Shown one piece after another: positions 2,121-60,993 of a DNA stretch of 64,000 nucleotides. Numbering within the stretch: position 1 is the stretch's first letter; each line of letters begins with the position of its first letter. The DNA lies in IMG/VR virus record IMGVR_UViG_3300031251_000001, positions 62,001-126,000 of that record; one strand, written 5' to 3'. The position numbers and the translations under genes were made by a program. Under the pieces are notes generated by a model. That model worked only from the letters and a program-made list of their open reading frames with translations, made no database searches and was not told the origin of the DNA.

Positions 2121-2530
2121 TGCTGGTTTTCTCCTCGACCCTGCTTGAGGACCTGTTGCAGGTAATCAAGCTGGGATTGCAGCGGTCCTTGGGGGTCAGC
2201 CTGGGCGATGTCCCGGCCACGGGCCAGGGCAACACACCTATTCCAAGGATAACAGTGGCGGTGCAGAAACGCACGACGCAGTGAATCCAGCAGATCGACT
2301 TGGAGTGGCCCAGCGGTCATGTCTCCCGAGGTCCCAGGAGCGGAAGGATCGGAGACAGCTTTGGCAGTAGCGACGTTCAGATTGCTGGTATTGAGTGCCT
2401 TGGTGTAGGCGGCGGGATCGAAAACGTCTCCCTGGATGGCCGGCAGCACCCAGTCGTCTGCTTGCAGCTGCGCGCGAAGCGTCTCCATCGCTGTTTTTAG
2501 GTCAGAACTGTAGTCAACATAATCCGCCAT
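2117..2530 (-). CDS. Hypothetical protein
   Basis: 137 aa ORF overlapping both neighbours by 1-4 nt (translational coupling). Confidence 0.7.
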   Translation of the reverse strand: MADYVDYSSDLKTAMETLRAQLQADDWVLPAIQGDVFDPAAYTKALNTSNLNVATAKAVSDPSAPGTSGDMTAGPLQVDLLDSLRRAFLHRHCYPWNRCVALARGRDIAQADPQGPLQSQLDYLQQVLKQGRGENQQ

Positions 2531-3240
2531 TATTTACTCAGGTATTGGACGCGATCGAGCATCTGCTGAATGGAACGACGACGCTGACTGATGTAACCGT
2601 CGCTGACCTTCAGCTTACGGGCCAGCTCCGAGGTGGGAAGCACGCTCTTGCCGTTGATCCCCAGCGTGTGGTCGAGGATGTGGCGGTCCATCTTGCCCAG
2701 GTCGTCTGCTACCAGGTCGATGGTGAGTGAGTGGATTGGTTTGCCGGCTGCCTCGCTGTAGATGCCGTCGTCCCCGAAGGATCCTTCTGACAGGCCGTGG
2801 TGGAAGTTCTGCATCTTGCGGACTTGCGATAAGTTGATGCCCAGGTGGTCGGCGATCTGCGAGTCGTTGGGCTCGTAGCCGTGCTCCTCCTGGAGACTGC
2901 GGGTGGCACCCATGATGGCACCGTGCAGTTGAGCGGCTCGTTCCGGGACGCGGATCAGATCGGTTTGTTTCTTGTTCTGCCGCTTGAGGCCTTGCAAGGT
3001 GTTGATGACGTGTGTGCCCAGGGCTGCCTGCTTGGGGTCGTAGTTGTCGAGGCTGCGCAGAGCCATCAGACGGGCCTGGCCCTGGAGGAGGGGGTTGTTC
3101 TGCCCAGGGACGTGGATATTGATTGCTTTGTCGATGGAGGGCTGCAAAGCGGTGAGCATCGCCTTGTTGGTGGTCGGTGACTTACCGGCCTTCCAGGCGG
3201 TATAGGGCTCGGTCAGCTCCTTTTCGAGTTTACTGGCCAT
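2530..3240 (-). CDS. RNA polymerase sigma factor (sigma70 family, group 3-like)
   Basis: Region-2-like 'LRSLDNYDPKQAALGTHV' and 'LIRVPER'; region-3 'HGYEPNDSQIADHLGI'; region-4 HTH 'SELARKLKVSDGYISQ'. Confidence 0.8.
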   Translation of the reverse strand: MASKLEKELTEPYTAWKAGKSPTTNKAMLTALQPSIDKAINIHVPGQNNPLLQGQARLMALRSLDNYDPKQAALGTHVINTLQGLKRQNKKQTDLIRVPERAAQLHGAIMGATRSLQEEHGYEPNDSQIADHLGINLSQVRKMQNFHHGLSEGSFGDDGIYSEAAGKPIHSLTIDLVADDLGKMDRHILDHTLGINGKSVLPTSELARKLKVSDGYISQRRRSIQQMLDRVQYLSK

Positions 3241-22132: not shown

Positions 22133-22148
22133 CAAAATACGTATTTTG
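22133..22148. repeat. Dispersed palindrome CAAAATACGTATTTTG, copy 2
   Basis: 16-bp perfect palindrome between a terminator and the candidate promoter. Confidence 0.95.
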
Positions 22149-34993: not shown

Positions 34994-37900
34994 CTAACTC
35001 TTGACGGCCTTCTTTTCGTCTTCGATCTTGGTGTTCAACTCTTGCTGTCGAGCCAACAGTTTCGGGTCGTTCGGGGTCGCGGCCAACTGTTTGTCCAGTT
35101 GAGCCCGTTCTGAGTGATAGCTCTTCATCTTAGCCAGGGCATGGAATTGACCCCATTCGAGGTTTTCCGGAGCCTGGTTGAGACGTTGTACGTACTCCTG
35201 GCTGTTAGGAGATTTCTCCACATCGGCGTCCCGCAGCAGGGCCTTGCTGAGGGTGGAAGCACTGAAGGAGGAAGGATTCGTCAGCTCCTGCTCGGTACTC
35301 TTGACGACCTTGTTGATGTCGATGAGCTGACCCTGCAGCTTGGCGTACTCGGCCTGGGGCAGTGGGTTCTGACCGGAGTCGGACATCTGCAGCTGGGAGC
35401 GGATGTCAGCTCGCTGCTGCAGCTTGTCCCCGACTTCCTTCTCCACGTCGGCGAAATCGTTAGGCCGGGCCTTGGTCGCCAGGTTGGTGCGGAACTCCGA
35501 CAACTCCATGTCAGCCTTGCCGCGATTGTTCCGCATCACCTGTTTCTGGGCTTCAGCGACGTCGGGGTTGTTCAGAGCCTCATCGGTCTTACGCTCAAAG
35601 TATTGCTTGGAGAAGTTAGTGCTGTCTTGCACGCCTTTGACGTACTGATCATGTTGACCGCTGATCTGGGCAGCAGCACGGGCTGAGGTGACCGGAGTCA
35701 TGGCGGCGCCAAGCATACCCTTGGCTCGTGTTAATCCGGAGTCAGGCGTACCCAGAGCAGGGCTGCTCTGTTCGAGCTGCTGGGCACGGTTATTGATGTC
35801 TTCTTGGCTGACGGTACCCAGCAGGTTCTTGCCAGCGTCCACGAGAGCAGGAGCAGCAATCATGCCGGCACCGAGCGGAGCTACACCGGAGATAGCACCC
35901 TCCAGGGTGTTCTCAACGACGTCTTTGGTCTCAAGCGGATTGCCGGCAGCCAAGTCGTAGATCATGCCTGCCGTCGAGCCGCCGACGCCGCCCATTGCTC
36001 CACCCCGGATCATGCTCTTGGGACCGAGGGTCTTACCCAGGGAACGACCTACCGCGACCTGGGTGCCGTTCTGGGCAATCTGGTTACCGATCCAATTGGT
36101 GGTAGAGTTGCCTTCCGGAGCCTGGGCAAAATCAGCCGGCGGTTGCTCCGCTGCCGACTCGTGCTCAGGGTACTGCTCAATTTGCTGTTGTGGTTGCTGA
36201 CGTGGAGGTCCCCATTGGTGCTGGACGCCATATTGTTCCAGACCGGGTTGCTGATATTGAGGTCGCATTTGCGGAGGCAGTTGCGGAGCAGGGAACGGAG
36301 ACTGGCCTTGCTGCGGTTGCTGGGCCTGGTGAGCCGCCATACCCGCCATCGGCGTGTATTGGTTGCTACTGTTGAAGCCGGGCTTCGGCATGTTGTTCTT
36401 GGGAGCACCAGCGCTGTAGGGATTGTGCTGTCCCTGCCCTGGCGGCTTTTCCCAGGGGACTTCGGGTGGCTTCACCGGATCCAGCGGGCTGATCTGGCTT
36501 CGGCTTGGATCGGGCTCGAAGTCGGCGGTCTTGTCGAACGCTTTATCGAAGGAGTCTTTGTAGCCCGGCGTGCAGTTCTTACACTCACTCGACGGGATGT
36601 CATAGACTGGCACCGCACCCATCGATCGAGGGCCGTGGCAGGGTTTACGACAGCCCTCGCAGTAATGGTACTGAGGGCGTGGCCCCTTGTACCAATGCTC
36701 TTTGCCGCCGTGTGTCACGAGATAGTGAGTATCTGTGTCACGAGAAGTATCAGGATCGTGTGTGTCACTGGCTACCTTGGGCAACGGTTTGCCTTCAGGT
36801 GGGAGCTCGACCGGCTTGCTCTTGTGTTGGAAGTAGCCTTCGCGGCCGAAGTCAGCAGCATGGGCCAGGCTCGGCACAAAACTGGTACCGGTTCGGTCGC
36901 TGACCGCACCCCGGTGAACCGAAGCCAGGAGACCCTTGCTCAGGTTCGAGCCGTACATGCGGGTGATCGGGTCGGGATCGTGCAGCAGGTTATCACTGGC
37001 TCGCACCATCTCGAAGTTGAACGGTGGTGGCTGGTCGTGGACGTGGACCTCATCGAGTTTGAGATCGTCCATCTCTTTGGCCATCTTGGGCGTCACCTTC
37101 ACACCGATCGTGTGGTGCAGGATCGGCGATTCCAGGTACTTCCCGATGGCCTTCTTGGGGTGGAGACGTTGCCCGCCCTCACGGGGTTCGTACGCCGCCT
37201 CGATCATGTGGTAAGGGACGACATCGTCCGGGATGTAGTCACCGACAAAGTCGTTGAGCCTGACGTGATTGATGAGGCCACGGCTGATGAGTTCCAGGTT
37301 ACGGCGATCGGCTCGCATGTTCTGGCTCTTGGCCAGATCCATCATCGTGTTGGTCCAGTAGCGACGGCCCTCACCGATGCCTTTGTGCATCGTGATCTTT
37401 TCGGGGTTGGGGATGCCGTTGGAGAGCGTATCGCCGGCCTCGACGGAATCACCAACCTTGACCGTGGCTGCTTGCTCCGGAGCTACGTAGTGGCGATTGG
37501 AGCCGACCCAGACGTAGCTACCGCCGGCAGGTGCCTTCTGGATACGTTGCACCGTGCCGTCAGCGACAGCGTGAGCAGCTCCGCCCTGGAAGGTGCTCGG
37601 GATCTGTGCCATCTGCTCGAACGACTTAAAGCCGGAGACAGCGACTTGACCGGCCACGCCGCCGGTGTGCTTAGAGTTGAGACCCATCTGGGTGACGGGC
37701 TCACTGACACCCTGGGAGGTGGTCATCCCTGGCATGTCGCCACGCTGCACCAGGTGCCCGTTTTCATCGAGACCTACGTCGTAGGCGTAGACGCCACCGT
37801 CAGGGCTGCTGCGGGCGATGGGGGAGCGGACAACCAGCTTCTTATGCCCGCCACGGTCGAGAGAGTCCAGGATCTTCTGCGTGATGACCGTATTGGCTTT

Positions 37901-38695
37901 GAACGGGCCGGTATCGCGGGCGAGGAGTGCCCCCACGCTTCCTTTATCGGATACGTCAACGGGAAGGCCCCGAAGGTACTGCTTGCGATCTTTAACGTGT
38001 TCGTCATCATCGGACACGTCGGTATCGACGACCACATTCCGGTGGGAGACTTGGTTAAGTAGTTTGTTGTAGTATCCAGCATTGGCCACCCCCAGCTTGA
38101 CGTCCACGACTCCCTTGCGGGCACCGAAGAGGCTGGCGTGATATTCAGGGTAAGACAACCCTTGTGAGTAGCTACGGTACACCGGCAGGAGCAGCGGGTT
38201 GTCCTGGTTATCGTTGTACTGCAGATCGCCGCCGACCAGGCTGTTGTAGTTGGCTTTGTTGCCGCGAGCTCCGGAGTGGATCTGCATCGCCAGAGGGTTC
38301 TTGGCGGCAATACCTTCATCGTAGACCTCGCTGTTCTGCTGTTGCTGAGCAGCCGAGGTGAGTTCGATAATCTTCTTCTTGCGTGTTTCGGGGGATAGGC
38401 CGGCGTGAAGTACCCGTTGGATCTGGGTATCGAGCTTGGCTTGGATACGCTGGGCCGTGGGGCTCTTGCGCATGTGCTCCAAGTCGAAGGAGTAACCTCC
38501 GGTGGACTGGGCGTGGAAGCGACCGATGTCCGAGAGTTTCTTGCTGACGTCGACGTACTGGTCGGGGTGCCGCTGAGCGACCTCCCGTAGTAACGTCTCA
38601 AGGCCCTTCTTGTCGAGCACCCGCGTGTAATCGCGGAGATCGGCAGGAAGGGCCATGTTAGCCTTGAGCTGGCCAGCGGTTGTTCTGATTGGCAT
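34994..38695 (-). CDS. Phage RNA polymerase beta'-like subunit, C-terminal part, with long non-RNAP extension
   Basis: 'SGARGN', 'GARKGVVD', bridge helix 'AGYYNKLL' and trigger loop 'SEPVTQMGLNSKHTGG'. The last ~590 aa are unrelated to RNAP. Confidence 0.85.
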   Translation of the reverse strand: MPIRTTAGQLKANMALPADLRDYTRVLDKKGLETLLREVAQRHPDQYVDVSKKLSDIGRFHAQSTGGYSFDLEHMRKSPTAQRIQAKLDTQIQRVLHAGLSPETRKKKIIELTSAAQQQQNSEVYDEGIAAKNPLAMQIHSGARGNKANYNSLVGGDLQYNDNQDNPLLLPVYRSYSQGLSYPEYHASLFGARKGVVDVKLGVANAGYYNKLLNQVSHRNVVVDTDVSDDDEHVKDRKQYLRGLPVDVSDKGSVGALLARDTGPFKANTVITQKILDSLDRGGHKKLVVRSPIARSSPDGGVYAYDVGLDENGHLVQRGDMPGMTTSQGVSEPVTQMGLNSKHTGGVAGQVAVSGFKSFEQMAQIPSTFQGGAAHAVADGTVQRIQKAPAGGSYVWVGSNRHYVAPEQAATVKVGDSVEAGDTLSNGIPNPEKITMHKGIGEGRRYWTNTMMDLAKSQNMRADRRNLELISRGLINHVRLNDFVGDYIPDDVVPYHMIEAAYEPREGGQRLHPKKAIGKYLESPILHHTIGVKVTPKMAKEMDDLKLDEVHVHDQPPPFNFEMVRASDNLLHDPDPITRMYGSNLSKGLLASVHRGAVSDRTGTSFVPSLAHAADFGREGYFQHKSKPVELPPEGKPLPKVASDTHDPDTSRDTDTHYLVTHGGKEHWYKGPRPQYHYCEGCRKPCHGPRSMGAVPVYDIPSSECKNCTPGYKDSFDKAFDKTADFEPDPSRSQISPLDPVKPPEVPWEKPPGQGQHNPYSAGAPKNNMPKPGFNSSNQYTPMAGMAAHQAQQPQQGQSPFPAPQLPPQMRPQYQQPGLEQYGVQHQWGPPRQQPQQQIEQYPEHESAAEQPPADFAQAPEGNSTTNWIGNQIAQNGTQVAVGRSLGKTLGPKSMIRGGAMGGVGGSTAGMIYDLAAGNPLETKDVVENTLEGAISGVAPLGAGMIAAPALVDAGKNLLGTVSQEDINNRAQQLEQSSPALGTPDSGLTRAKGMLGAAMTPVTSARAAAQISGQHDQYVKGVQDSTNFSKQYFERKTDEALNNPDVAEAQKQVMRNNRGKADMELSEFRTNLATKARPNDFADVEKEVGDKLQQRADIRSQLQMSDSGQNPLPQAEYAKLQGQLIDINKVVKSTEQELTNPSSFSASTLSKALLRDADVEKSPNSQEYVQRLNQAPENLEWGQFHALAKMKSYHSERAQLDKQLAATPNDPKLLARQQELNTKIEDEKKAVKS

Positions 38696-38715
38696 CCTTG
38701 CCTCAGTCCCTGCTG

Positions 38716-39576
38716 CTATTGGTTATCGAGGTCCTCGTGATTGAGATCCTCGTTCTTGGGCTCTTCATGAACCTCTTTCACTTTACCATGATCGTCCGTT
38801 TCGGACTTCTCTTCGGTATGAGTGTGCTCCGCTGTGGTGTGTTCGGTCGTGCCGCCGACAGGGACCGTAGCGGTTGCATGTTTTGCAACTTCTGATTCAA
38901 TTTTTGAAACAGTTGGTGCAACGTGAGGAGCGGGGGCAGGGGCAGGTTTGGTGGCAACCGGCTTGACCGGTTCAGGACCCTTGTGCGGAGCCGCTACAGG
39001 TGCCACGACTGGCTTGGGTGTCGTGTGCACTGCTGCTGGTGGCTGCTCGTGCTCGGTGATTGTTTCCGGGCAGTTGGGAGCATTCACGGGACGAACGATA
39101 GCCCAGCCTTCGGGGATCTCGGCTTCACTGACCAGGTAATCACACAGGGTGACCAGTGCTTCTTCCTGGCCCTGGGGTACACGAATGATCGTGCGGTTCT
39201 GATCGGCTGCCGCAGCAGTCACGATGGCGTGCTGCCAGGCGTCGACAGGGAGATGGATCAGAGTGATGTGGGGTGATGCGGTACCACCCTTGGAGTTGCG
39301 TGGCACCACTCGCGGGGGCTGGGCTGCAGGGAGCTTCTTGGCGTTGGCGTAATAAGCATCAGGAGCCGAAGTGAGGTCCTGGGGGTTACGGCCGCGAATC
39401 GGGGTTCCTTGTTGTCGTTCTGCGTTCATGCGAGCACCATCGAATATGTCGACGGCCATGGCGCCTGCTGAGGTGCCCTGACCGGTGCGACGGGGTTGAG
39501 GCTTCTTGGGACTTCCGTAGTAAGCGTGTTCAGGGGATTCAATACCGCCATTGAGATCGCGGTGTGGTAGGGACAT
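38716..39576 (-). CDS. Hypothetical protein
   Basis: 286 aa with a disordered Pro/Glu/His-rich C-terminus. Confidence 0.65.
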   Translation of the reverse strand: MSLPHRDLNGGIESPEHAYYGSPKKPQPRRTGQGTSAGAMAVDIFDGARMNAERQQGTPIRGRNPQDLTSAPDAYYANAKKLPAAQPPRVVPRNSKGGTASPHITLIHLPVDAWQHAIVTAAAADQNRTIIRVPQGQEEALVTLCDYLVSEAEIPEGWAIVRPVNAPNCPETITEHEQPPAAVHTTPKPVVAPVAAPHKGPEPVKPVATKPAPAPAPHVAPTVSKIESEVAKHATATVPVGGTTEHTTAEHTHTEEKSETDDHGKVKEVHEEPKNEDLNHEDLDNQ

Positions 39577-39578
39577 GA

Positions 39579-39803
39579 CTAACCTCCCAGTCGGATGAGT
39601 TGGGCTGGCTTTTCCCCGAGCCGACTGAGTACCGCAGGGAAATCGGGTTCACCGTGTTTACTGACAACGATCTGGCGACCTACGCTGTAGCAGACCACCA
39701 GGGCGTTGCCGTCAATGTCACGGATGACCACCTGCTCGATAGGAATCACGTCGCGTTTAGCTCCGCGACCAATGCCTCCGGCAGTGACGATATCCGCAAA
39801 CAT
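39579..39803 (-). CDS. Small hypothetical protein
   Basis: 74 aa, tightly packed, GGAG RBS. Confidence 0.6.
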   Translation of the reverse strand: MFADIVTAGGIGRGAKRDVIPIEQVVIRDIDGNALVVCYSVGRQIVVSKHGEPDFPAVLSRLGEKPAQLIRLGG

Positions 39804-39804
39804 A

Positions 39805-40632
39805 CTAGCTCCGCTTCAGGCTGTTGAGTCTGGACAGGATGGATTGGTTCATAGGTCGCACCGATGGTAACGGACGCATAGCCGGCATGGCAACCCCATC
39901 TCCGGCATCGGAAGCCTGCTTACCCTGGAGAGGGTCGATCGGCTGGATGGGGTCGGTAGGCATGCCAGGGATACCCTGGGAAGGATCCTGACCGCCGCCT
40001 GCAGCTCCACCAGCACCGCCACCAGACATAGCTCCGCCTGGTTGTTGCTGCTGAGCCATCATCTCGTCCGGCGTGGCAACCATGTGGCTGGCGGGCATAG
40101 GAATGCCCTTAGCGTCGATCATGGCAGCGGCCAGCTTCTGGATAAGCACCAGACCGTTGTTGATGTCGACCTTGCTCTTGCCGCCCTCGCCCTGTTGGAC
40201 CAGGGTGGGCATGGAGTTCTGCACCTGGGTCAAGGCTGCCTGGATCACACCAGGATCAACCAACTCATTACCCGACTGCTTGCCCTGCTCGTCTTCAAGG
40301 ACAGCGCTCATCATGCGGATGCACTGGATGATAACCGAGCCTGGGTCGATCTTCACCTTGGGAGCCTGGGGCGGCATCATGCCGGGCATACCGGGTTGAC
40401 CCATGCCGGGTTGACCACCGGGGGCCATCATGCCGGGTTGCGGTTGGGGGATGTCCATAGGCTGATCAGGAGCAACGCCAGGAACGGGGGAACCGCCTCC
40501 CGATGGATCGGCAGGCGGTGCGCTGGCTCCTGGATCGTTACCACTGACTCCCGCCGGCATCATCCCGTCTGCTGTCTTGTAGAGACCGTAGTCAGCACGA
40601 CGACGGAGGCGAGCGAAAATGGAATCAGTCAT
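39805..40632 (-). CDS. Pro/Gly/Met/Gln-rich putative virion protein
   Basis: 275 aa with KTA near the N-terminus, KQA near the C-terminus, and two similar 'K(V/I)D...(I/V).(C/I)...(S/A)A' helices. Confidence 0.65.
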   Translation of the reverse strand: MTDSIFARLRRRADYGLYKTADGMMPAGVSGNDPGASAPPADPSGGGSPVPGVAPDQPMDIPQPQPGMMAPGGQPGMGQPGMPGMMPPQAPKVKIDPGSVIIQCIRMMSAVLEDEQGKQSGNELVDPGVIQAALTQVQNSMPTLVQQGEGGKSKVDINNGLVLIQKLAAAMIDAKGIPMPASHMVATPDEMMAQQQQPGGAMSGGGAGGAAGGGQDPSQGIPGMPTDPIQPIDPLQGKQASDAGDGVAMPAMRPLPSVRPMNQSILSRLNSLKRS

Positions 40633-40634
40633 GA

Positions 40635-43600
40635 CTACCCCTTGTCTTGCAAAATCTCGACCTCATCGTGAGGATCGATGGTTCTTTGTTCTAACGCTTT
40701 TAGCACATCCTGGATGTTGCGGAAAGTACGCAACGGACGTTTGCTCTTATTGGATGTTAGCTCATAGAGCCCACCCACGTACTCCTGTGACGGCATGGCC
40801 ACTGGTGTTTTACGGTCAGTCGGGCTGATCAGGTGCTTGCTGGGGAGCATGCGTTCGTAGGTCTCTTTTGCCGCCTCTTCGGTGGCGGGCACGTGGAACT
40901 GCGAGGCGTCGCCATCGAAGTCCATGTTGAAACCCTTGAGCACCAGCGTGGGCACGTGGACGGCGTTGCCGGCCACCAGCTGCGGACGGAAGCCCATATA
41001 GCCCAGTTTGTGGAGCACCGGGGCGCGATTCATTTGGACCGGCTTTTGATCCATGACGCGGAGAAGGGAGCGGTGTGCCTCGTCATCTTGTTGGTTGATC
41101 GATTCCATGGCGTTAGCCACCGTACGACCGCGGCGAACCATGTCACGAACGATCTCTTTCTTGTAGACATCGAACGCCAATCGCTTGGGGATACCGATCT
41201 GGTCCATGTTCAAGTCAGGGTTGGGCACCACTACCGAGCGACCAACCTGGTCCACGGCGGAGCCAATGAGACGCCGTTGAACCGTGCCCATTTTAGGATT
41301 GCTTCCAAAGATATGCTGCAGAACTCCCCGTACGTTGCGCTCCTTGGACTTCTTTGTAACAGGATCTCCAAGACCCGTGACTGCCTTGAGAGCGTTGTAG
41401 AGGGTGAGATGTTCTGGTCCGACGTAGTCATCGCCCATCTCCTTGTGGAAGTCCTTCACCGCTTCGTTGGCGGAGTGGAGTTCTTTATAGAGCGGGTTGG
41501 CGTCAGCCACCATAGGAACACCTGAGCCGCCCAGTGTCGAGATGCGACGGTAAGCAGGTGGGATCACTGGGGCGGACTTCAGGGTCCAATCGCGTGGGTG
41601 CATGCCCACACGTTTGGTGTCCATCATGTAGTACAGCTTCCGAATCGCTTCATCCCGCTTGGTCTTACTACCCGACTGAAATGCTTGTTTAGCCGTCGCA
41701 ATCTCATGGTCGAGGTTAATACCTTCCAACGCTTTGACGATCGCATCAGGGCCTGTCTTGCCATTCAAGTGCTCCTTCCCGGCCAGGATGTCCTCGAACT
41801 TGCCTTGCGTCAGACCGAGGACTCGTTTGACCGGGTCTTCCATGACCGGGTTGACGAGAGGAGTAACGAGAGGAATCTTCGACCACTTCATGCCGCCATG
41901 TCCACCGGTGATCTCCGGATCGAACAGGCCACCGGGAACGGGGTCCAGGGCTTCACCTGATTTGACCGTCTCGGCGTTCTTGAGGGTGCGACCCTCAGCC
42001 AGATCCTCGACTGACTTGTTAGTCATCGCCAGGAAGTGCGTACGCTTGCCGTCCGGCACGGGATCGATGCCAGCTGCCCGGAGTTGGGCCAGATATTTCT
42101 GGTAAACGGTGGTCGTGTGCGGCTCGACCGGCTTCTGTCCACGCTGATATTGCAGCCAGTAAGTGTCATTACGCTGGCCACGAACCAGGCCCGCATCGCG
42201 GAGGACTTCATAAGCACCGTGGGAAAGGATGGCGTTCACATCCAGGAGCGAGACGCGCTTGGAGTTGGAGACGTGAGCACCGTTCTTGAGGTAGTAGCTG
42301 GCACCGTCTTCGACCGTGATGTCGTAGACCTTCTCACCGGGCCTCTTGAACCGGGTGTAGATGGTGGCGACTACGAGCGTGGCCGGCCCATAAAGGCGTT
42401 GTGAACTTTTCCGAGGAAACCGCTCATGGCCCCGGTAAAGGTCTGTCCGATCGACGTCCGCATCCGCCGAACCAAGTCGGCGGTCGGCTTTGGACCTGGC
42501 TGGTCGAGCTTCTTGAATATGCTTTGCGTCCTTTCGGGCGTGAAGGCTGGTAAGACGTACGGTCGCTGCGGGGCAGCGGCTTCCTGGCCATCGATAGGGG
42601 CGGACTGCTGAGTGGGGTCCATCGCAATAAATCTCCTGACCGGGCTGCAGCAGATTAGCAGCGATCTTCGTGTCGTGGATAAAGAACTCGTGACCGGGGG
42701 TGCATTCCACCACGGAACCATCGGTGAAAGTGATGACCACCAAGTAACGGGGAGCATCGTACTCCATCCAATCGGTGATCTCGCGGTAGACCGGAATCAT
42801 GTTCTCGTTGAGCAGGACCTTCGTGGGAACGCGAACGGCTTTCCGCTTCTTGACAATCTCACCGATCGTGTCGGAACCGAACTCGGTCCACAGCTTGGTC
42901 GTCCCGACAAAGCAGCCACCGTAACCACCCTTGGCCGGCTCGTCATCCTGGTTATAGGCCCCGCTCGAGCGGGCCTGTCCCTTGGATTCCGAAGTGTGAT
43001 GCAGTTTCATCATGAAGCGGGTGCCGGTCGCCACGCCGGGGATCTTCTGTCCTGTCTCGGGATCGGTGATCTCTTCCGAGAGCTTCATGCCGTGTTTGCC
43101 CAACTCGTTGCGGACGTACTCGTCGTGATCTTGCCCAGTGAAATCCTTCACCAGGTAGGGTTGACCTGTCTTGCGGGCGATCTTCCCCAGGCCGAGCTCG
43201 TGGGCCTGGGCAGCGTTGGTGCGGGAGATCATGCCGTTGGGGCTGAGCAGTAGCTCGAAGGGGTTGCCGTCTTTGTCGTGCGGCATCTGGCTGTCAGGAA
43301 GGATCTTCGAGATCACCCCCTTATCACCGAAACGCCCTGAGAGCTTATCCGCCTCTACAGTCGGGTGGTAGGATTTGACGATGACGACGGGGCCTTTCTT
43401 GCCCTGCTGCACGTCCACGACTTCACCATCGTGGTCATGGTCCCAGGCGACCGAGGCGTCCTGCCAGGAGTCCGACTTGCGTCGCAGGAGGCGGTTGGGA
43501 TTCATGCCCTTCTGCTTGGCGGCGACGATGAGTGGCTGACCGTGGGTGACCTTCTGGCCGACCTTGATGACGCCAGTGTCGTCCATCTTGCCGAGCTGCT

Positions 43601-45659
43601 CACGAGTGAAGCGGCCAGGGAACAGATCAGAGAAGGCCTGGCGGCCCTGCTTGGTCTTGTTGTCGACCTCCAGCTCGTGCTGGTAGGCGTGCTCTGAAGT
43701 CATCTTCCTGGCAAGAGAATCCGAGATGACCACGGCGTCGTTGTGATTAAGGCCCTTCCAGGGGACGTAGGCGGAGTAAGCATTGATGCCCATCGCCATG
43801 GTCCCGTGCTGATCGGTATAGTTGCTGCCGGCGAGAAGCTGACCCTTCTGTACGGTGCTGCCTTCCTGGACAATGGGTTCCTGGTTGAGCAGGGACTTAC
43901 GGTTGAAGGGCAGGTTCTTGTAGTAGGGCTTGATGCTGGTCGTGCCGTCCGGGTGCTGCATGTGGATTTCATCTTCCGTCACCTTCGTCACACGACCAGG
44001 CTTATCGGCCGCGACGGCTCCAAAACGATGACCCAACCATTGTTCGTAGGGCTGGTTGGTCTCCTCGTCCACGTTCTGTACGTGAGGAGCCTCGCGATGC
44101 TGGAGGGATAGCGCCTGCATGTACATGCGGGCACCCATGGAGTTTCGCTGTCCCTTGTTGGAGCTCTGGAACGGGATGGTGTTGGTCAGCGGGCTGAAGT
44201 TACGCGACCCGTGCGGGGAGACATAATCCAGCTCGGACTTCTTGGCATAGTCGAGCTCACCGTTGCGGATCACCGGCACATAATCATTCTTCGATTCCAT
44301 CGACTTGTAGAAGCCGATCGTCTTGCCGGCCAGGTCCTGGGGCGATCGCCACAGCTTCTTGCCGCTCTTGGGATCGATGAACTGGCTGTAGAGCCTGCCG
44401 TCGCTGCCTTTGCGTGAAGCAACGCTGGCAGAGAGATCGACGCCGGCCCGTTCCGATTCCGGTGTCTTGACGACATCAAGGAAGCCCAGGTGCGAGTTCT
44501 GCACCGAGCGGGCCTCCAGCGGGATGGCAGCTCCGGAGATGCCACCCTCACCCATGCGGGTGACGTTATGCAGGCGGTCAGCAAACTCAGAGGTATTGAT
44601 TTCTTCCAGGGGCTGGGCGACGCCGCTGCGCAGCAGGACGTGATCCAGTTGATGGGTCAGGGCACCCGAAGGCATGTGCTGCAGGTGGCCCGCTTTGGAC
44701 ATCTTGTAGAGGAGTTTCTTCTGCCAACCCTCAGAATCCTTGGCGATACGCTCGGCAAAGAGGTCTTCTGGCCCCAGGAACTTCTGATACTCGAGCGCGT
44801 CACGATCATCGGGTTTGGCCTCGCCCCGGTTGATCTTGATCAGCTTACTGGTGGCAGCCAGGAGCACGTCCTTGTTGAGCGTGGGGCTGACGTTGCCGAT
44901 CGTGCTCTTGTTGACGAACGGATTGACCTTGTAGCCCTGATACTTCTCGACGAGCTTGGCGATACGATCGACGCCCGGTGCCGCCAGCTCTTCTTTGGAG
45001 AGTAGCTTGTGAGACAGTCGATCAAGTGCGTCACGTTCCTTGACCCCGCGGTTGGACTGGGCGATCTCTTTGCCCCAGTGGTGTTCGATCTCGTCGTCCT
45101 TGGCTCCCATGGCGGTCAGCAGCGGCAGGAGGGGTGCGGTGGATCCGGCGATGTTGAGATGGAAGGTGCCCTTGTCGGGATCGAAGCCGATGCGGTGCGT
45201 CAGGCCTTCACCAGGAAGGATATTGAGGTAAGTCTCCAGTTCGCCGTTACCTTTGCGTCGGTTGTAGACGCCCGGTTCGAGACGCTGTTGGTTACGAACG
45301 GCGTACTTGGTCCCGTTACGCACGACGGTCCCGAAGTCGCTAAAGTGTGGCACGGTGGCAACGACTTGCTTGCGGGAGTCAACCATCTTGTCGGTGGCAT
45401 TGTCGTAGAGCTCCCACGTCCCTTCGACACGCCGGCCCAGCGATCCACGCGAGAGGATGGCCTTCTTGACCTCGCTGGGCTTGCGGTATTCAGGGTCGAT
45501 ATATTTGGGGTTGGTGAGCTTGAGCGTGTGCGTGCGATTCTTCACCGGGGGCAGATTCTGCATAGCACCGAGCACGTTGCCGTACACGTTTTTACGCAAC
45601 GCCCCAGTATCGCCGAACTCACGGAGGGTCACTCCCTCCGGGACTCCATCGAGATCCAT
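40635..45659 (-). CDS. Phage multisubunit-type RNA polymerase: beta fused to beta' N-terminal catalytic part, intein-containing
   Basis: Beta motifs 'KTPESERAG', 'DKLSGRFGDKGVI', 'RFMMKLHH'. Beta' motifs 'NRAPVLHK' and catalytic 'NMDFDGD'. Confidence 0.92.
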   Translation of the reverse strand: MDLDGVPEGVTLREFGDTGALRKNVYGNVLGAMQNLPPVKNRTHTLKLTNPKYIDPEYRKPSEVKKAILSRGSLGRRVEGTWELYDNATDKMVDSRKQVVATVPHFSDFGTVVRNGTKYAVRNQQRLEPGVYNRRKGNGELETYLNILPGEGLTHRIGFDPDKGTFHLNIAGSTAPLLPLLTAMGAKDDEIEHHWGKEIAQSNRGVKERDALDRLSHKLLSKEELAAPGVDRIAKLVEKYQGYKVNPFVNKSTIGNVSPTLNKDVLLAATSKLIKINRGEAKPDDRDALEYQKFLGPEDLFAERIAKDSEGWQKKLLYKMSKAGHLQHMPSGALTHQLDHVLLRSGVAQPLEEINTSEFADRLHNVTRMGEGGISGAAIPLEARSVQNSHLGFLDVVKTPESERAGVDLSASVASRKGSDGRLYSQFIDPKSGKKLWRSPQDLAGKTIGFYKSMESKNDYVPVIRNGELDYAKKSELDYVSPHGSRNFSPLTNTIPFQSSNKGQRNSMGARMYMQALSLQHREAPHVQNVDEETNQPYEQWLGHRFGAVAADKPGRVTKVTEDEIHMQHPDGTTSIKPYYKNLPFNRKSLLNQEPIVQEGSTVQKGQLLAGSNYTDQHGTMAMGINAYSAYVPWKGLNHNDAVVISDSLARKMTSEHAYQHELEVDNKTKQGRQAFSDLFPGRFTREQLGKMDDTGVIKVGQKVTHGQPLIVAAKQKGMNPNRLLRRKSDSWQDASVAWDHDHDGEVVDVQQGKKGPVVIVKSYHPTVEADKLSGRFGDKGVISKILPDSQMPHDKDGNPFELLLSPNGMISRTNAAQAHELGLGKIARKTGQPYLVKDFTGQDHDEYVRNELGKHGMKLSEEITDPETGQKIPGVATGTRFMMKLHHTSESKGQARSSGAYNQDDEPAKGGYGGCFVGTTKLWTEFGSDTIGEIVKKRKAVRVPTKVLLNENMIPVYREITDWMEYDAPRYLVVITFTDGSVVECTPGHEFFIHDTKIAANLLQPGQEIYCDGPHSAVRPYRWPGSRCPAATVRLTSLHARKDAKHIQEARPARSKADRRLGSADADVDRTDLYRGHERFPRKSSQRLYGPATLVVATIYTRFKRPGEKVYDITVEDGASYYLKNGAHVSNSKRVSLLDVNAILSHGAYEVLRDAGLVRGQRNDTYWLQYQRGQKPVEPHTTTVYQKYLAQLRAAGIDPVPDGKRTHFLAMTNKSVEDLAEGRTLKNAETVKSGEALDPVPGGLFDPEITGGHGGMKWSKIPLVTPLVNPVMEDPVKRVLGLTQGKFEDILAGKEHLNGKTGPDAIVKALEGINLDHEIATAKQAFQSGSKTKRDEAIRKLYYMMDTKRVGMHPRDWTLKSAPVIPPAYRRISTLGGSGVPMVADANPLYKELHSANEAVKDFHKEMGDDYVGPEHLTLYNALKAVTGLGDPVTKKSKERNVRGVLQHIFGSNPKMGTVQRRLIGSAVDQVGRSVVVPNPDLNMDQIGIPKRLAFDVYKKEIVRDMVRRGRTVANAMESINQQDDEAHRSLLRVMDQKPVQMNRAPVLHKLGYMGFRPQLVAGNAVHVPTLVLKGFNMDFDGDASQFHVPATEEAAKETYERMLPSKHLISPTDRKTPVAMPSQEYVGGLYELTSNKSKRPLRTFRNIQDVLKALEQRTIDPHDEVEILQDKG
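42264..42914 (-). mobile_element. Intein (217 aa, no homing endonuclease) in the RNAP gene
   Basis: GG|CFVGTT block A, 'ECTPGHEFF' block B, 'VYDITVE' block F and 'HVSN|S' C-terminal junction. Confidence 0.9.
42371..42622 (-). CDS. Nested 83-aa ORF inside the intein (+1 frame)
   Basis: AGGAG 10 nt before the ATG, GC-ending codon bias, and boundaries matching the intein linker. Confidence 0.6.
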   Translation of the reverse strand: MDPTQQSAPIDGQEAAAPQRPYVLPAFTPERTQSIFKKLDQPGPKPTADLVRRMRTSIGQTFTGAMSGFLGKVHNAFMGRPRS

Positions 45660-47944: not shown

Positions 47945-47964
47945 TCCAAAATACGTATTTTGGA
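47945..47964. repeat. Dispersed palindrome TCCAAAATACGTATTTTGGA, copy 4
   Basis: 20-bp perfect palindrome abutting the upstream stop codon. Confidence 0.95.
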
Positions 47965-48957
47965 TTAGCCGAATAACTTGGGTAGCGCCAGGTTGACGAT
48001 ACCCACCGCTGCTCCGTAATTCCCCCAACTCTTGTCGGGCATCCCGGTGGCGATGTTCAGCGCTTTGCCCACCACCTTGCCCATAACGTACCCTTGTCCC
48101 GCCGCCATCGCAAGCTGACCTAGCTGATTAGCGGTCACCCAGCCTGGCGTCGCGTTGTCATCCGGGAACTGCTGAGCGGCGTGCATAACCCCCATCGTCG
48201 CTCCGGTGATCGGTGCCGGGGCCTGCCCCTGCCAGAGGGTCTGACCCAGAGCATTGACGTTGATGTCACCAGGATTAGACTGTGCGGGTTCGGCCCCCTC
48301 ATAGCCAATGGTATCCATCGCTACTTTGGGGATGGGCACATGGGGTGTCTGGTGGAAAGGCACGACCGAGGGAACTGGTTCTATCGGTTCCTGCACACCA
48401 GGCCAACCATCTGTCATGCTGTGCCCGTTAGCGTGGTTGGTCAGAGCCCACAACGCCCCAGGGGCGGCACCGAGGAGGCCACCCATCAAGGCACCATTAC
48501 GTCGCAGCCTCTTCTTGTCCCAGCCATCTGGTGTTTTGGAGGCAACCAGGGAACCGGCACCATAGCCCAGGCCCGTACCCAGGAGCCCTGAAGCGATCAT
48601 GGCAGCCAGGGGTGAGGGGGCATTGGGGATGCCAGTCGTGGAAGGCAGGAATTGAAGAGCCTCCAGCCCCTCCCGCAAGGGCCTCGACTCGGCCACCTTG
48701 ATCCAGCTGTCCTGGCGTGCCTCTTCAGCGGTGATCGGCATTTTCTGGACAGGGAGAGCTGAGCACTTGGCGAGCTTCCGCAGATAGGCTACCGGCAGAT
48801 CGGTTTGAATATCGAAGGCGACTTTGCGAGTGAGCGGGTTGGCGTAGATCCGCACCGGACCTGGTAGCAGGAAGAGGTGGGGACGCAGGCTGGCAGCCAC
48901 CGGGCGGGCGAAGGCTGCATACTCGTCGATGCGGTCGGTGATGGTGTCCCAACTCAT
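47965..48957 (-). CDS. Putative internal virion protein with glycine zippers
   Basis: 330 aa with GLLGTGLGYGAG, GGLLGAAPG and several KVA motifs. Confidence 0.65.
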   Translation of the reverse strand: MSWDTITDRIDEYAAFARPVAASLRPHLFLLPGPVRIYANPLTRKVAFDIQTDLPVAYLRKLAKCSALPVQKMPITAEEARQDSWIKVAESRPLREGLEALQFLPSTTGIPNAPSPLAAMIASGLLGTGLGYGAGSLVASKTPDGWDKKRLRRNGALMGGLLGAAPGALWALTNHANGHSMTDGWPGVQEPIEPVPSVVPFHQTPHVPIPKVAMDTIGYEGAEPAQSNPGDINVNALGQTLWQGQAPAPITGATMGVMHAAQQFPDDNATPGWVTANQLGQLAMAAGQGYVMGKVVGKALNIATGMPDKSWGNYGAAVGIVNLALPKLFG

Positions 48958-60522: not shown

Positions 60523-60538
60523 CAAAATACGTATTTTG
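60523..60538. repeat. Dispersed palindrome CAAAATACGTATTTTG, copy 5
   Basis: 16-bp palindrome about 24 nt upstream of thyX. Confidence 0.95.
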
Positions 60539-60690: not shown

Positions 60691-60993
60691 TCATTTAGAC
60701 GGGTAAGGTCTGCCGCCCAGATTGTTGATAGCGTTATCAGGCGTGACGAAATCAGCCTTGTTACCACCCACCATGATGGGCGGCATAGTGATACCCATGA
60801 CTCCCACCCAGATACGACCCGTTCGATTGACTTCATCAAGTTCTTCCTGGGTTAGCTTCCATGAGGAAATAACCGCAGCAAAACCTTGAATCAAACGACG
60901 TGAGATACACAACGGGTCACAGTCGTCAGCCCTGACGTCGTTAGGACGACCCAAGACTGCTTCAGACTCGTCGAACGACGCGGCGACTGCCAT
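60691..60993 (-). CDS. Hypothetical protein
   Basis: 100 aa with 'SSWKLTQEELDEVNRTGRIWV'. Confidence 0.65.
   Translation of the reverse strand: MAVAASFDESEAVLGRPNDVRADDCDPLCISRRLIQGFAAVISSWKLTQEELDEVNRTGRIWVGVMGITMPPIMVGGNKADFVTPDNAINNLGGRPYPSK

What the first reader, a model, noticed from the sequence alone, without database searches (positions are those of the whole stretch)
34994..45659. Two-gene RNA polymerase with a non-cellular split and variant catalytic motif
Seen: one ORF joins a compact beta-like region to the beta' N-half, so both catalytic barrels are in one chain, with NMDFDGD in place of cellular NADFDGD. The bridge helix and trigger loop are on a second gene located three ORFs downstream. 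No alpha or omega subunit is in the window. Known: bacterial RNAP splits at beta/beta', and phiKZ-like RNAPs split each subunit in two. Inference: a distinct phage RNAP architecture embedded in the morphogenesis region.
Basis: partly seen in the sequence, partly recalled or inferred. Interest (0 to 1): 0.68.

Follow-up and report, generated by a model that had tools for sequence, protein, structure and literature searches.

The report
Two-chain phage RNA polymerase
A 214-kb soil phage encodes a stripped-down bacterial-type RNA polymerase in two genes. One gene joins beta to the first half of beta-prime and carries an intein; the other encodes the rest of beta-prime. This layout is shared by hundreds of uncultured phages and a few isolates, probably travels in the virion with a phage sigma factor, and has never been studied biochemically.

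Summary
ORF 40635-45659(-) encodes beta joined head-to-tail to the N-half of beta-prime, with both catalytic barrels and NMDFDGD, interrupted by a 217-aa mini-intein. Three small ORFs follow. ORF 34994-38695(-) then encodes the beta-prime C-half (bridge helix, trigger loop) plus a variable tail of about 600 aa.

The 214-kb phage genome has no alpha or omega, no second RNAP set, and two sigma-70-family genes.

The layout is not unique to this window:
- At least 373 metagenomic proteins share the fusion. Every neighbourhood I inspected (four metagenomic contigs, Arash and Vibrio phage D69) keeps the split beta-prime C gene downstream.
- Isolates with the fusion are Salmonella phage Arash and Vibrio phages D69, D148 and D181.
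- Published Arash virion proteomics found both subunits and the sigma homologue.

NMDFDGD is a minor variant at a position that varies across the family.

Best reading: a virion-associated, probably sigma-dependent RNAP that lacks alpha, omega and both zinc sites. It differs from the phiKZ/AR9, crAss/YonO and most listed mReC enzymes. No paper I could search describes or characterises this layout.

Verdict: a real, uncharacterised variant of phage multisubunit RNAP, and a divergent member of an existing family. Virion packaging and sigma dependence in this phage are inferred, not shown.

The parts
40635..45659 (-). Precursor gene (1674 aa) for beta fused to beta-prime N-half. It gives 1457 aa once the intein is removed.
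   Evidence: ORF and translation. Pfam Rpb2_3, Rpb2_6 and Rpb1_2 in one chain. PDB and NCBIfam alignments to bacterial beta and beta-prime.
42915..45659 (-). Beta part before the intein (aa 1-915). It includes the beta barrel with the two catalytic lysines in the motif ADKLSGRFGDKGV (aa 770-786, window 43302-43352).
   Evidence: The AF2 model of aa 475-1674 best matches bacterial beta chains (Foldseek E about 1e-34).
42264..42914 (-). Class-1 mini-intein of 217 aa (Cys916 to Asn1132, followed by Ser1133). It sits in the conserved beta motif GG..G|SKR, equivalent to E. coli GGQRFGEME. No homing endonuclease domain.
   Evidence: Intein-free relatives close the gap exactly. NCBIfam intein_Nterm scores 35.8 bits (cut-off 24.5) and intein_Cterm 21.1 bits (cut-off 15.6). 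Pfam Intein_splicing E 8e-5. Nine listed relatives carry an intein at the same site, 161-396 aa long.
42048..42263 (-). Beta C-terminal segment after the intein (aa 1133-1204). It ends at ...AAGIDPVPDG and runs into beta-prime with no linker.
   Evidence: Alignment with relatives, motif coordinates and my own reading against the E. coli beta C-terminus (from memory, marked as such).
40638..42047 (-). Beta-prime N-half (aa 1205-1674). It has the clamp helices (aa 1386-1404) and the barrel with NMDFDGD (window 40908-40928). The N-terminal zinc ribbon is deleted and there is no Cys.
   Evidence: The chain ends at rpoC model position 535 of 1147.
39805..40632 (-). Intervening ORF 1 (275 aa), rich in Pro, Gly, Met and Gln, with one conserved helical core.
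   Evidence: Same position in relatives L008, L009, L010 and L012. No Pfam or PHROG match.
39579..39803 (-). Intervening ORF 2 (74 aa), a small protein conserved in position (74-91 aa in relatives).
   Evidence: No family match. The Atlas search was uninformative.
38716..39576 (-). Intervening ORF 3 (286 aa), low complexity with an acidic C-terminus.
   Evidence: No family match.
36821..38695 (-). Beta-prime C-half core (aa 1 to about 625). Bridge helix at window 38048-38143, trigger loop at 37649-37705. It starts at rpoC model position 548. No Cys, so the second beta-prime zinc site is gone.
34994..36820 (-). Clade-specific C-terminal tail of the beta-prime C gene (aa about 626-1233, plus the stop codon). 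In order: a CxxC...CxxC element (aa 679-708), a Pro/Gln-rich stretch, a Gly/Ala-rich stretch, then a long helical region.
   Evidence: Tails of comparable length occur in L008 (1089 aa), L009 (1210 aa) and P0122. There is none in Arash gp216 (606 aa), L011 (626 aa) or D69 0264 (609 aa). No Pfam, PHROG or Atlas match.
2530..3240 (-). Sigma-70-family factor (236 aa, P0123), the likely specificity subunit. It is a homologue of Arash gp10, which was detected in virions.
   Evidence: Pfam Sigma70_r3 scores 29.9 bits, over the cut-off. BLASTP to Arash gp10 gives E 3e-14. The profile hits RpoS and SigA in PDB at E 9e-12. All top 50 Foldseek matches of the AF2 model are sigma chains. A homologue also occurs in Vibrio phage D69.
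47947..47962 (.). 16-bp palindrome CAAAATACGTATTTTG, 16 nt upstream of the first gene of the tightly packed minus-strand run 47933 to 34994 that contains both RNAP genes. Candidate promoter or operator (unproven).
   Evidence: There are 22 exact copies in the genome and 5 in the window, against 0 in shuffles.

Best explanation
The two genes encode the core of a minimal, bacterial-type, phage-encoded RNA polymerase.

Chain 1 is translated as a 1674-aa precursor. A mini-intein in a conserved beta motif must splice out. The product is a 1457-aa polypeptide in which the beta C-terminus continues directly into the beta-prime N-terminus. One chain therefore carries both catalytic barrels: the beta lysines and the NMDFDGD aspartates.

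Chain 2 supplies the bridge helix, the trigger loop and the rest of beta-prime. In this subclade it also carries a disordered or helical tail of about 600 aa.

The enzyme has no alpha, omega or zinc sites. The covalent beta to beta-prime link may replace the alpha-dimer assembly platform (inferred).

By homology with Salmonella phage Arash, and from the genes' position in the head and tail gene module, the polymerase is most likely made late, packaged into virions and delivered with the DNA to start early transcription. It would use a phage sigma-70-family factor (window 2530-3240) for promoter recognition.

Shown: gene layout, motifs, intein, family membership, absence of alpha and omega. Inferred: splicing, packaging, sigma dependence, role of the tail.
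For: Layout and motifs.

Clean split: chain 1 ends at rpoC model position 535 and chain 2 starts at 548.

Intein: over-threshold N- and C-terminal splicing regions. Intein-free relatives are colinear across the site.

Family: 373 proteins scored at E<=1e-5. The 120 best all score over 1340 bits, on contigs up to 233 kb. Gene order is conserved in four unrelated contigs.

Tree: Arash plus D69 are sister to the metagenomic family that holds the window, and three bacteria lie on a long separate branch. All these splits have SH-aLRT 100.

One RNAP only: a single set by Pfam in the 214-kb genome. No alpha or omega. No T7-like enzyme was found, but the controls were silent in that search.

Virion link:
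- Arash gp206 had the highest spectral count in virions, and gp216 and sigma gp10 were also detected (PMC10585845).
- The window's capsid protein, gp222-like and gp236-like genes are colinear with Arash's structural module.
- The spliced core has 0 Cys in 2087 aa, against 0.8-1.6% Cys in the phage's other proteins.
- There is no sigma-70-type promoter excess and no minus-strand terminator across 31-50.5 kb.

Sigma:
- It is homologous to virion sigma gp10.
- It co-occurs with the fused RNAP in the window, Arash and D69, and is absent from a Rhizobium phage with an unsplit beta-prime.
- The beta-prime clamp helices are retained.
- Predicted sigma to beta-prime N complex: ipSAE 0.46 against a best control of 0.00, partner pLDDT at least 66, runs agreeing in at least 22% of contacts. 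The tool calls this 'weak support'. The mark was reached by 58 of 80 solved complexes and 2 of 110 mismatches, but a score of 0.60 or under was seen in only 7 of those 80 and in both mismatches that passed.
Against: - There are no proteomic, transcriptomic or biochemical data for this phage. Only DNA runs from rhizosphere metagenomes hold it.
- The Arash authors note that abundant enzymes might contaminate virion preparations.
- The complex prediction gives only weak support. It could reflect memory of solved sigma-core complexes, and it cannot tell binding to the phage core from binding to the host core.
- The intein's penultimate residue is Ser, not the usual His, and splicing is untested.
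- Pfam cannot exclude a divergent analogue of alpha or omega. The three conserved ORFs between the genes are unexplained.
- The AF2 model of chain 1 has pTM of only 0.52, and the relative placement of the two barrels could not be measured with the tools available.
Confidence: 0.7

Rival explanations
1. The enzyme is functional but not packaged. It is made after infection and serves only middle or late transcription, like T7 RNAP or the phiKZ non-virion enzyme. Its position among structural genes is incidental.
For: There is no virion proteomics for this phage. The Arash paper concedes that highly expressed enzymes may co-purify with particles. In this genome the portal gene lies far from the RNAP genes, whereas in Arash it is adjacent.
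Against: Arash gp206 and gp216 are among the five proteins with the most spectra, with 100% and 89% coverage, and sigma gp10 was also found. The genes sit in a terminator-free run with capsid-module genes. An enzyme expressed with late genes and not packaged would have no way to start the next infection, and there is only one RNAP set. The core is free of Cys.
Confidence: 0.2
2. The two phage sigma factors redirect the host RNAP, as in T4, SPO1 and RNAP-less jumbo phages. The phage polymerase would then use a different, unrecognised specificity factor, as phiKZ gp68 or AR9 gp226 do. One of the three conserved intervening ORFs could be that factor.
For: Reviews state that known phage multisubunit RNAPs lack sigma, and that phage sigmas act on host core. 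The complex prediction is only weak. Three conserved genes of unknown function sit between the RNAP genes.
Against: The sigma homologue is a virion protein in Arash together with the RNAP. It co-occurs with the fused RNAP in three distant lineages. The clamp helices that dock sigma region 2 are conserved. The complex scored 0.46 against 0.00 for controls.
Confidence: 0.3
3. The genes are decaying relics. The intein insertion and the Ala-to-Met change at the active site have inactivated the enzyme.
For: The window has the longest terminal branch in the family tree, 0.76. The intein lacks the penultimate His and the endonuclease domain.
Against: Both ORFs are intact over 1674 and 1233 codons. 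All catalytic motifs are kept: the three aspartates, the beta lysines, the bridge helix and the trigger-loop His. Met at this position also occurs in 9 other family members, and the position varies among N/G/A/S/T-A/M. The intein has Cys1, the TxxH block, a terminal Asn and Ser at +1. All the listed inteins at this site share the ending VSN|S.
Confidence: 0.03

Closest known systems
Salmonella phage Arash gp206 and gp216 (plus sigma gp10); also Vibrio phage D69 genes 0261 and 0264
   Same: Same layout: a 1525-1527-aa beta::beta-prime N fusion, then a separate beta-prime C gene downstream on the same strand within the structural genes. A gp10-type sigma is encoded elsewhere in the structural module. 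Chain 1 is 30.6% identical over 85% of its length. They form the sister clade in the tree.
   Different: Arash and D69 have no intein. (D181 and D148 have an annotated homing endonuclease under the match to the gene.) Their beta-prime C is 606-609 aa with no tail. Arash keeps three Cys at the second zinc site. Nine Arash genes, some on the opposite strand, separate the two RNAP genes, against three here. The portal gene is adjacent in Arash and distant here.
phiKZ and AR9 jumbo-phage multisubunit RNAPs (virion and non-virion)
   Same: Phage-encoded beta/beta-prime-type enzymes without alpha or omega. Beta-prime is split into N and C polypeptides. One set is packaged in virions (PMC7598289, PMC7824862).
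   Different: In those phages beta is also split, giving 4-5 polypeptides with no fusion. There are two paralogous sets, no sigma-70 homologue, and a fifth subunit (gp68 or gp226) for promoter recognition. Their sequences are so divergent that none appeared in the tblastn search at E<=1e-5 or among the top PDB hits, whereas this enzyme hits bacterial beta at 1e-52.
Natural bacterial beta::beta-prime fusions (Helicobacter type NF007172, Wolbachia type NF011417)
   Same: The beta C-terminus is joined directly to the beta-prime N-terminus in one chain. Both models match both halves of the phage protein.
   Different: The bacterial fusions carry the whole beta-prime (about 2,840-2,890 aa) and work with alpha2 and omega. 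Here beta-prime is cut after the catalytic barrel. Scores are far below the family cut-offs (165 against 5372 bits).
Cyanobacterial and plastid split beta-prime (gamma or rpoC1, plus beta-double-prime or rpoC2)
   Same: Beta-prime is divided between the catalytic barrel and the bridge helix. Chain 1 matches rpoC1 models and chain 2 matches rpoC2 models.
   Different: The phage split (rpoC model positions 535|548) lies about 20-30 residues upstream of the cyanobacterial one. Chain 2 residue 24 aligns to rpoC2 position 4, and gamma extends 67 model positions beyond the end of chain 1. It is therefore probably an independent split. Beta is separate in cyanobacteria.
mReC, the multisubunit-RNAP-encoding Caudovirales of Weinheimer and Aylward 2020 (PMC7481178)
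   Same: Metagenomic tailed phages, some over 200 kb, with bacterial-like but deep-branching beta and beta-prime genes that sit among virion genes.
   Different: The rows I read of their table mostly pair a separate beta (about 1000-1560 aa) with an undivided beta-prime of 900-1300 aa carrying NADxDGD. The paper mentions no fusion or split in mReC. Its NADxDGD filter would exclude this window. Whether the two groups are one lineage was not tested. One listed pair (1487 aa, then 1303 aa three genes later) looks like the present layout.
Virion RNAPs fused to structural or ejected proteins (Thermus phage P23-45 tape-measure RNAP; crAss-like phage virion RNAP)
   Same: These are precedents for a packaged two-barrel RNAP that carries extra modules for packaging or ejection (bioRxiv 10.1101/2022.12.01.518664, abstract seen). 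That is a possible analogy for the beta-prime C tail.
   Different: Those are single-chain, highly divergent two-barrel enzymes with no recognisable beta or beta-prime sequence similarity. Here the Pfam and NCBIfam matches to bacterial beta and beta-prime are strong.

Membership tests
Bacterial-type multisubunit RNAP catalytic core (beta/beta-prime) | Two double-psi beta barrels carrying the beta lysine pair and the beta-prime DFDGD aspartate triad | tested here: met
   Rpb2_6 E 1e-48 and Rpb1_2 E 1e-23. Motifs at aa 770-786 and 1578-1584.
Bacterial-type multisubunit RNAP catalytic core (beta/beta-prime) | Bridge helix and trigger loop | tested here: met
   P0002 aa 185-216 and 331-349 align to PDB beta-prime chains at E 1e-32.
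Bacterial-type multisubunit RNAP catalytic core (beta/beta-prime) | Orthology to rpoB and rpoC (NCBIfam equivalog cut-offs) | tested here: not met
   Scores are 250.6 against 896 bits for rpoB and 215.6 and 176.1 against 963.5 bits for rpoC. The proteins are homologous but far outside the cellular orthologue range.
Bacterial-type multisubunit RNAP catalytic core (beta/beta-prime) | Alpha dimer and omega subunits encoded alongside | tested here: not met
   PF01000, PF01193 and PF01192 have no match at E<=1 in the 214-kb genome, while all 14 control genomes gave hits. Use of host alpha or omega cannot be excluded.
Bacterial-type multisubunit RNAP catalytic core (beta/beta-prime) | Two beta-prime zinc sites (N-terminal ribbon, and the Cys cluster before the trigger loop) | tested here: not met
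   There is no Cys in spliced chain 1 or in the chain 2 core. About 70 residues are missing where the ribbon lies.
Arash-like fused phage RNAP (beta::beta-prime N plus beta-prime C) | A single ORF carrying beta and the beta-prime N-half, about 1,450-1,530 aa without inteins | tested here: met
   The product is 1457 aa after intein removal. 89 of the 120 best relatives are 1450-1500 aa.
Arash-like fused phage RNAP (beta::beta-prime N plus beta-prime C) | A separate beta-prime C gene a few genes downstream on the same strand, within the virion-gene module | tested here: met
Arash-like fused phage RNAP (beta::beta-prime N plus beta-prime C) | Monophyly with Arash and D69 relative to cellular RNAP | tested here: met
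   SH-aLRT is 100 for phages against three bacteria. The outgroup sample is very small, and phiKZ and mReC were not included.
Arash-like fused phage RNAP (beta::beta-prime N plus beta-prime C) | A co-encoded gp10-type sigma factor | tested here: met
   P0123 against Arash gp10 gives E 3e-14. A homologue is present in D69.
Arash-like fused phage RNAP (beta::beta-prime N plus beta-prime C) | Presence of the subunits in virions | not testable with these tools
   This is known only for Arash, by mass spectrometry. No proteome exists for this uncultured phage.
phiKZ/AR9-type phage multisubunit RNAP | Beta and beta-prime each split into two or more polypeptides; two paralogous sets; no sigma homologue | tested here: not met
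   Here beta is whole and fused. There is one set and two sigma-70-family genes.
mReC (Weinheimer and Aylward 2020) | A separate beta, plus a beta-prime of at least 800 aa carrying NADxDGD | tested here: not met
   The motif lies in the fused chain and reads NMDFDGD. The phylogenetic relation was not tested.
Class 1 intein (HINT domain) | N-terminal Cys, block B TxxH, C-terminal Asn, and Ser/Thr/Cys at +1 | tested here: met
   Cys916, TPGHEF, Asn1132 and Ser1133. TIGR01445 and TIGR01443 score above their cut-offs.
Class 1 intein (HINT domain) | Penultimate His | tested here: not met
   The ending is ...HVSN|S. All the listed inteins at this site end VSN|S. Some active inteins lack this His (my own knowledge).
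Sigma-70 family (for ORF 2530-3240) | Regions 2, 3 and 4 in order | tested here: met
   Pfam r3 is over the cut-off and r4 is weak. The profile aligns positions 59-223 to RpoS residues 134-313 at E 9e-12. All top 50 Foldseek matches are sigma chains. Region 2 falls below Pfam's threshold.

The most novel reading that the evidence does not exclude
This family would be the first virus-encoded RNA polymerase holoenzyme of the bacterial sigma-70 type. It would have a core of only two polypeptides (beta::beta-prime N and beta-prime C) that assembles without alpha, omega or zinc. It would be packaged in the capsid together with its own sigma factor and injected to start transcription independently of the host. 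The Cys-free composition and the beta-prime C tail would be adaptations to packaging and ejection. That would make it the smallest known sigma-dependent multisubunit RNAP. It would also contradict the current statement that phage multisubunit RNAPs lack sigma.
Probability: 0.4. Interest if true: 0.75.

Novelty: new variant of a known kind. Interest (0 to 1): 0.58.

Why it matters
Known phage multisubunit RNAPs (phiKZ, AR9) are very divergent, are split into 4-5 pieces and use non-sigma specificity subunits. Reviews up to 2026 state that such enzymes lack sigma, and that phage sigmas serve host RNAP.

This family is different. It is a much more bacterial-like core reduced to two chains. It has no alpha, omega or zinc sites, it co-occurs with sigma-70-family factors, and in one isolate it is found in virions.

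If the inferences hold, it offers three things:
- a natural minimal system for asking what alpha, omega and the zinc sites are needed for;
- a test of how a covalent beta to beta-prime link substitutes for the assembly platform;
- a test of how a large RNAP is packaged and ejected.

It would also add a well-alignable viral lineage to RNAP phylogenies. A cultivable member (Arash, on Salmonella Typhimurium ATCC 14028) makes all of this directly testable.

Tried and rejected
- **IMG/VR pattern scan.** A scan with P0001 found nothing. The method needs near-identical peptides, so this says nothing about relatives.
- **Neighbouring proteins.** PHROG and Pfam scans of the three intervening ORFs, the tail and most neighbours gave no matches.
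- **Atlas look-alike search.** It gave nothing usable for the tail and only noise for the 74-aa ORF.
- **Word-based search with the tail alone.** It found one relative. The tail evolves too fast for this search.
- **mReC.** I considered filing the enzyme under mReC. The paper's criteria and the rows I read of its subunit table do not fit, so I left the relation open.
- **NMDFDGD as a defining variant.** Rejected after family statistics.
- **AF2 model of chain 1, aa 475-1674.** pLDDT 74.6, pTM 0.52. Foldseek confirms the beta fold. It cannot show the relative placement of the two barrels, because beta and beta-prime are separate chains in the PDB matches.
- **Complex prediction, sigma with beta-prime N.** The verdict was only 'weak support': 0.46 against a best control of 0.00. 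Partner pLDDT was at least 66 and contact agreement at least 22%. The mark was reached by 58 of 80 solved complexes and 2 of 110 mismatches, but at 0.60 or under by only 7 of the 80 and by both mismatches. I used it as a minor point only.
- **Expression.** No RNA runs hold the locus, so I did not use read laying.
- **T7-like RNAP search.** None was found, but the controls were silent in that search, so the negative is weak.
- **Host-type signals.** The sigma-70 promoter and terminator scan showed no enrichment.
Full report
**Where the window lies.** The window is bases 62001-126000 of a 214,229-bp IMG/VR virus record that CheckV rates 100% complete. DNA runs that hold it come from rhizosphere metagenomes, and no RNA run holds it. 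GC content is about 59% throughout. Nearly all genes in the first 52 kb of the window are on the minus strand.

**Checking the observation.**
- ORF 40635-45659(-) is 1674 aa (P0001) and ORF 34994-38695(-) is 1233 aa (P0002).
- Pfam places Rpb2 domain 3, Rpb2 domain 6 (E 1e-48) and Rpb1 domain 2 (E 1e-23) in P0001, and Rpb1 domain 5 (E 1e-19) in P0002.
- Against solved structures, P0001 aa 80-925 align to bacterial beta (E 1e-52). Residues 1296-1669 align to beta-prime residues about 165-560 (E 1e-45 to 1e-48). P0002 aa 3-500 align to beta-prime from about residue 660 (Mycobacterium numbering) onward.
- The beta lysine motif, NMDFDGD, the clamp helices, the bridge helix and the trigger loop are all present.
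- Three ORFs of 275, 74 and 286 aa lie between the two genes.

**The intein.** Intein-free relatives align colinearly with P0001 except for aa 916-1132. That segment starts with Cys and contains TPGHEF. It ends ...VSN and is followed by Ser. NCBIfam's N- and C-terminal intein splicing models both score above their cut-offs. The insertion interrupts the conserved beta motif GG..G|SKR, which I equate with E. coli GGQRFGEME from my own knowledge. At 217 aa with a basic, low-confidence linker, it is a mini-intein without an endonuclease. Nine listed relatives carry inteins of 161-396 aa at the same site.

**Junction and split.**
- After the intein, the beta C-terminal helices end at ...AAGIDPVPDG (aa 1204), and beta-prime starts immediately.
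- About 70 residues that hold the N-terminal zinc ribbon in bacteria are missing.
- On NCBIfam's rpoC model, P0001 ends at position 535 and P0002 begins at position 548. The cut is therefore clean and loses nothing.
- Compared with the cyanobacterial gamma and beta-double-prime models, the cut lies about 20-30 residues earlier, which suggests an independent event.
- Models of the Helicobacter- and Wolbachia-type beta::beta-prime fusions also match. Each of the two rearrangements thus has a cellular precedent. The combination does not, as far as I found.
- All scores are far below the orthologue cut-offs. Bacterial models score well above archaeal ones: 250 against 90 bits for beta, and 216 against 83 bits for beta-prime N.

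**What the genome does and does not encode.**
- Pfam searches of all six frames find one RNAP set only.
- They find no alpha N-terminal or dimerisation domain and no omega, while all 14 control genomes gave hits.
- They find no T7-like polymerase, but the controls were silent in that search.
- They find two sigma-70-family genes, one in the window at 2530-3240 and one at genome 26732-27358.

**The sigma in the window.** The window sigma (P0123) has region 3 above Pfam's threshold. Its profile hits RpoS at E 9e-12 over regions 2 to 4. Its AF2 model matches only sigma chains among the top 50 Foldseek hits.

**It is a family, not a singleton.**
- The word-indexed protein search scored 373 proteins at E<=1e-5. 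The 120 best all score over 1340 bits and carry both Rpb2_6 and Rpb1_2. Most are 1450-1500 aa, and some lie on contigs of 200-233 kb.
- Four contigs from different sources keep the gene order: fused gene, then 2-4 small ORFs, then beta-prime C.
- In the phage collection the only matches covering at least 80% of the query are Salmonella phage Arash (gp206, 30.6% identity) and Vibrio phages D69, D148 and D181. The Vibrio genes are annotated as hypothetical.
- Other hits in that collection are bacterial rpoB/rpoC contigs filed as phage, and Rhizobium phages with an unsplit 1127-aa beta-prime.
- A quick maximum-likelihood tree (20 rows, 1453 columns, LG+G4) separates three bacteria from all phage sequences. 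It places Arash plus D69 as sister to the metagenomic family that contains the window. All these splits have SH-aLRT 100. The window has the longest terminal branch, 0.76. This tree has too few outgroups to say anything about deep origin.

**The catalytic-motif variant.** Among the 120 relatives the heptad reads NADFDGD (58), GADFDGD (41), GMDFDGD (5), NMDFDGD (3), AADFDGD (2), TMDFDGD (1) or SADFDGD (1). In 9 the pattern was not found. The Ala-to-Met change is therefore a minor variant at a tolerant position. It is not a signature of the architecture.

**Link to the virion.**
- Mass spectrometry of Arash particles gave gp206 the highest spectral count (3516 spectra, 100% coverage). gp216 (1210 spectra) and sigma gp10 (100% coverage) were also found. 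The authors note both the early-transcription reading and the contamination alternative (PMC10585845).
- In this genome, tblastn links window ORFs to the Arash major capsid protein (23303-24256), structural protein gp222 (26718-28124) and gp236 (15445-18279). They follow the same order after the RNAP genes as in Arash.
- The window sigma is homologous to gp10 (E 3e-14). Like gp10, it sits among baseplate and tail genes. D69 has one too, and the Rhizobium phage has none.
- The stretch 31-50.5 kb shows no excess of host-type promoters and no minus-strand terminator.

Packaging of the enzyme in this phage is an inference from these points.

**Composition.** All four Cys of P0001 lie in the intein. 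The spliced chain 1 plus the chain 2 core (2087 aa) have none. The phage's predicted proteome has 1.6% Cys and the structural region 0.8%. 79 of 95 intein-free relatives are also Cys-free. Arash gp216 still has three Cys at the second zinc site. Loss of both zinc sites is a fact. A connection with passage through the tail or an oxidising compartment is speculation.

**The tail of chain 2.** The beta-prime core ends near aa 625, in line with the 606-626-aa proteins of Arash, D69 and contig L011. The remaining 600 aa or so hold, in order, a CxxC...CxxC element, Pro/Gln-rich and Gly/Ala-rich stretches, and a long helical region. Tails of similar length but poor conservation occur in the closest contigs. 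No family or look-alike was found. By analogy with virion RNAPs fused to ejected or structural proteins, a packaging or ejection role is possible but untested.

**Sigma and core.** A two-chain prediction of beta-prime N (49-row alignment) with sigma (5 rows) scored 0.46, against 0.00 for the best of three controls. Partner pLDDT was at least 66, and the runs agreed in at least 22% of contacts. The tool rates this 'weak support': 58 of 80 solved complexes and 2 of 110 mismatches reached the mark. At 0.60 or under, however, only 7 of the 80 did, as did both mismatches that passed. Solved sigma-core complexes may be remembered by the model, and the test cannot distinguish phage core from host core.

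**Literature.**
- The Arash paper annotates the genes as beta and beta-prime without describing the fusion or the split.
- Two reviews of jumbo-phage RNAPs and a 2026 review of jumbo phages describe only the phiKZ/AR9 type. They state that these enzymes lack sigma.
- The mReC paper reports phage beta and beta-prime genes among virion genes. The rows I read of its subunit table mostly pair a separate beta with an undivided beta-prime of 900-1300 aa, its text mentions no fusion in mReC, and its NADxDGD filter would exclude this window.
- Further searches found no paper on this layout.

Only the open-access library was searched, so an unseen description cannot be excluded.

**Verdict.** The finding is real and its anatomy is now precise. 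The window holds a divergent, intein-bearing, tail-bearing member of an uncharacterised family of phage RNAPs. The family's layout is beta::beta-prime N plus beta-prime C, with no alpha, omega or zinc sites and with a co-occurring sigma. No paper I could search describes that layout. Function as an RNAP is very likely. Virion delivery and sigma dependence are plausible but rest on one proteomic study of a 30%-identical relative and on context.

Noticed in passing
window 10597-10612, 22133-22148, 29695-29710, 47947-47962, 60523-60538 (and 17 more copies elsewhere in the genome): The perfect 16-bp palindrome CAAAATACGTATTTTG occurs 22 times exactly, plus once with one mismatch in its 12-bp core, in the 59%-GC genome. 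Shuffles give 0. Most copies lie in short gaps, and several inspected copies lie about 15-20 nt before the ribosome-binding site and ATG of a minus-strand gene. It is absent from the loci of relatives. It is a candidate phage promoter or operator, possibly read by the phage sigma and RNAP.
   Followed up: partly
P0001 relatives (proteins P0003-P0121); window intein at 42264-42914: The fused RNAP gene is an intein hot spot. 25 of the 120 sequences are over 1560 aa, nearly all through 1-3 inteins (a few also, or only, through C-terminal extensions). The inteins lie at nine or more different conserved sites, for example GEGG|S, GDKL|SGRYGDKG, ISR|TNP and FG|SSPK. Many are about 340-410 aa, and several proteins carry LAGLIDADG domains. 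The window's intein is a shrunken 217-aa version.
   Followed up: partly
window 40635-45659 and 36821-38695; also 6175-10575: The spliced RNAP core has no cysteine in 2087 aa, and 79 of 95 intein-free relatives have none either. The 1466-aa ORF at 6175-10575 is also Cys-free. That ORF sits where Arash has its virion cell-wall hydrolase gp8. Cys-free composition may mark proteins that are ejected.
   Followed up: partly
window 38716-40632: Three fast-evolving, low-complexity ORFs (275, 74 and 286 aa) keep their order between the two RNAP genes in distant relatives. They could be extra RNAP subunits, scaffold-like proteins or internal head proteins. Nothing identifies them.
   Followed up: partly
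genome 26732-27358 (minus strand, outside the window, about 35 kb upstream of window base 1): A second sigma-70-family gene of 208 aa, with Pfam region 2 at 39 bits and a clear region 4. Two sigmas with one RNAP suggest temporal classes of phage promoters.
   Followed up: no
L018 (Vibrio phage D69, OZ195729.1 143288-150339); hits H2 and H3 (D181, D148): The fused RNAP gene and the beta-prime C gene of the oyster-associated Vibrio phages are annotated as hypothetical proteins. In D181 and D148 the match comes in three pieces, with an annotated homing endonuclease under it.
   Followed up: no
phage collection hits H5-H21 (e.g. CAKLQH020000005.1 'Acinetobacter phage MD-2021a', AFYI01000006.1): Several records filed as phage are bacterial contigs that carry nusG, rplKAJL and rpoBC. 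They produce false 'phage RNAP' hits in searches of that collection.
   Followed up: yes
window 48954-50105, 52974-58844(+), 60962-63175: ORF 48954-50105 pairs an N-terminal domain that Pfam calls InPase (PHROGs: minor head protein) with a C-terminal domain that PHROGs name phosphoheptose isomerase. A 1956-aa plus-strand ORF has no family match at all. A 737-aa DNA methyltransferase scores PHROG E 3e-92.
   Followed up: no
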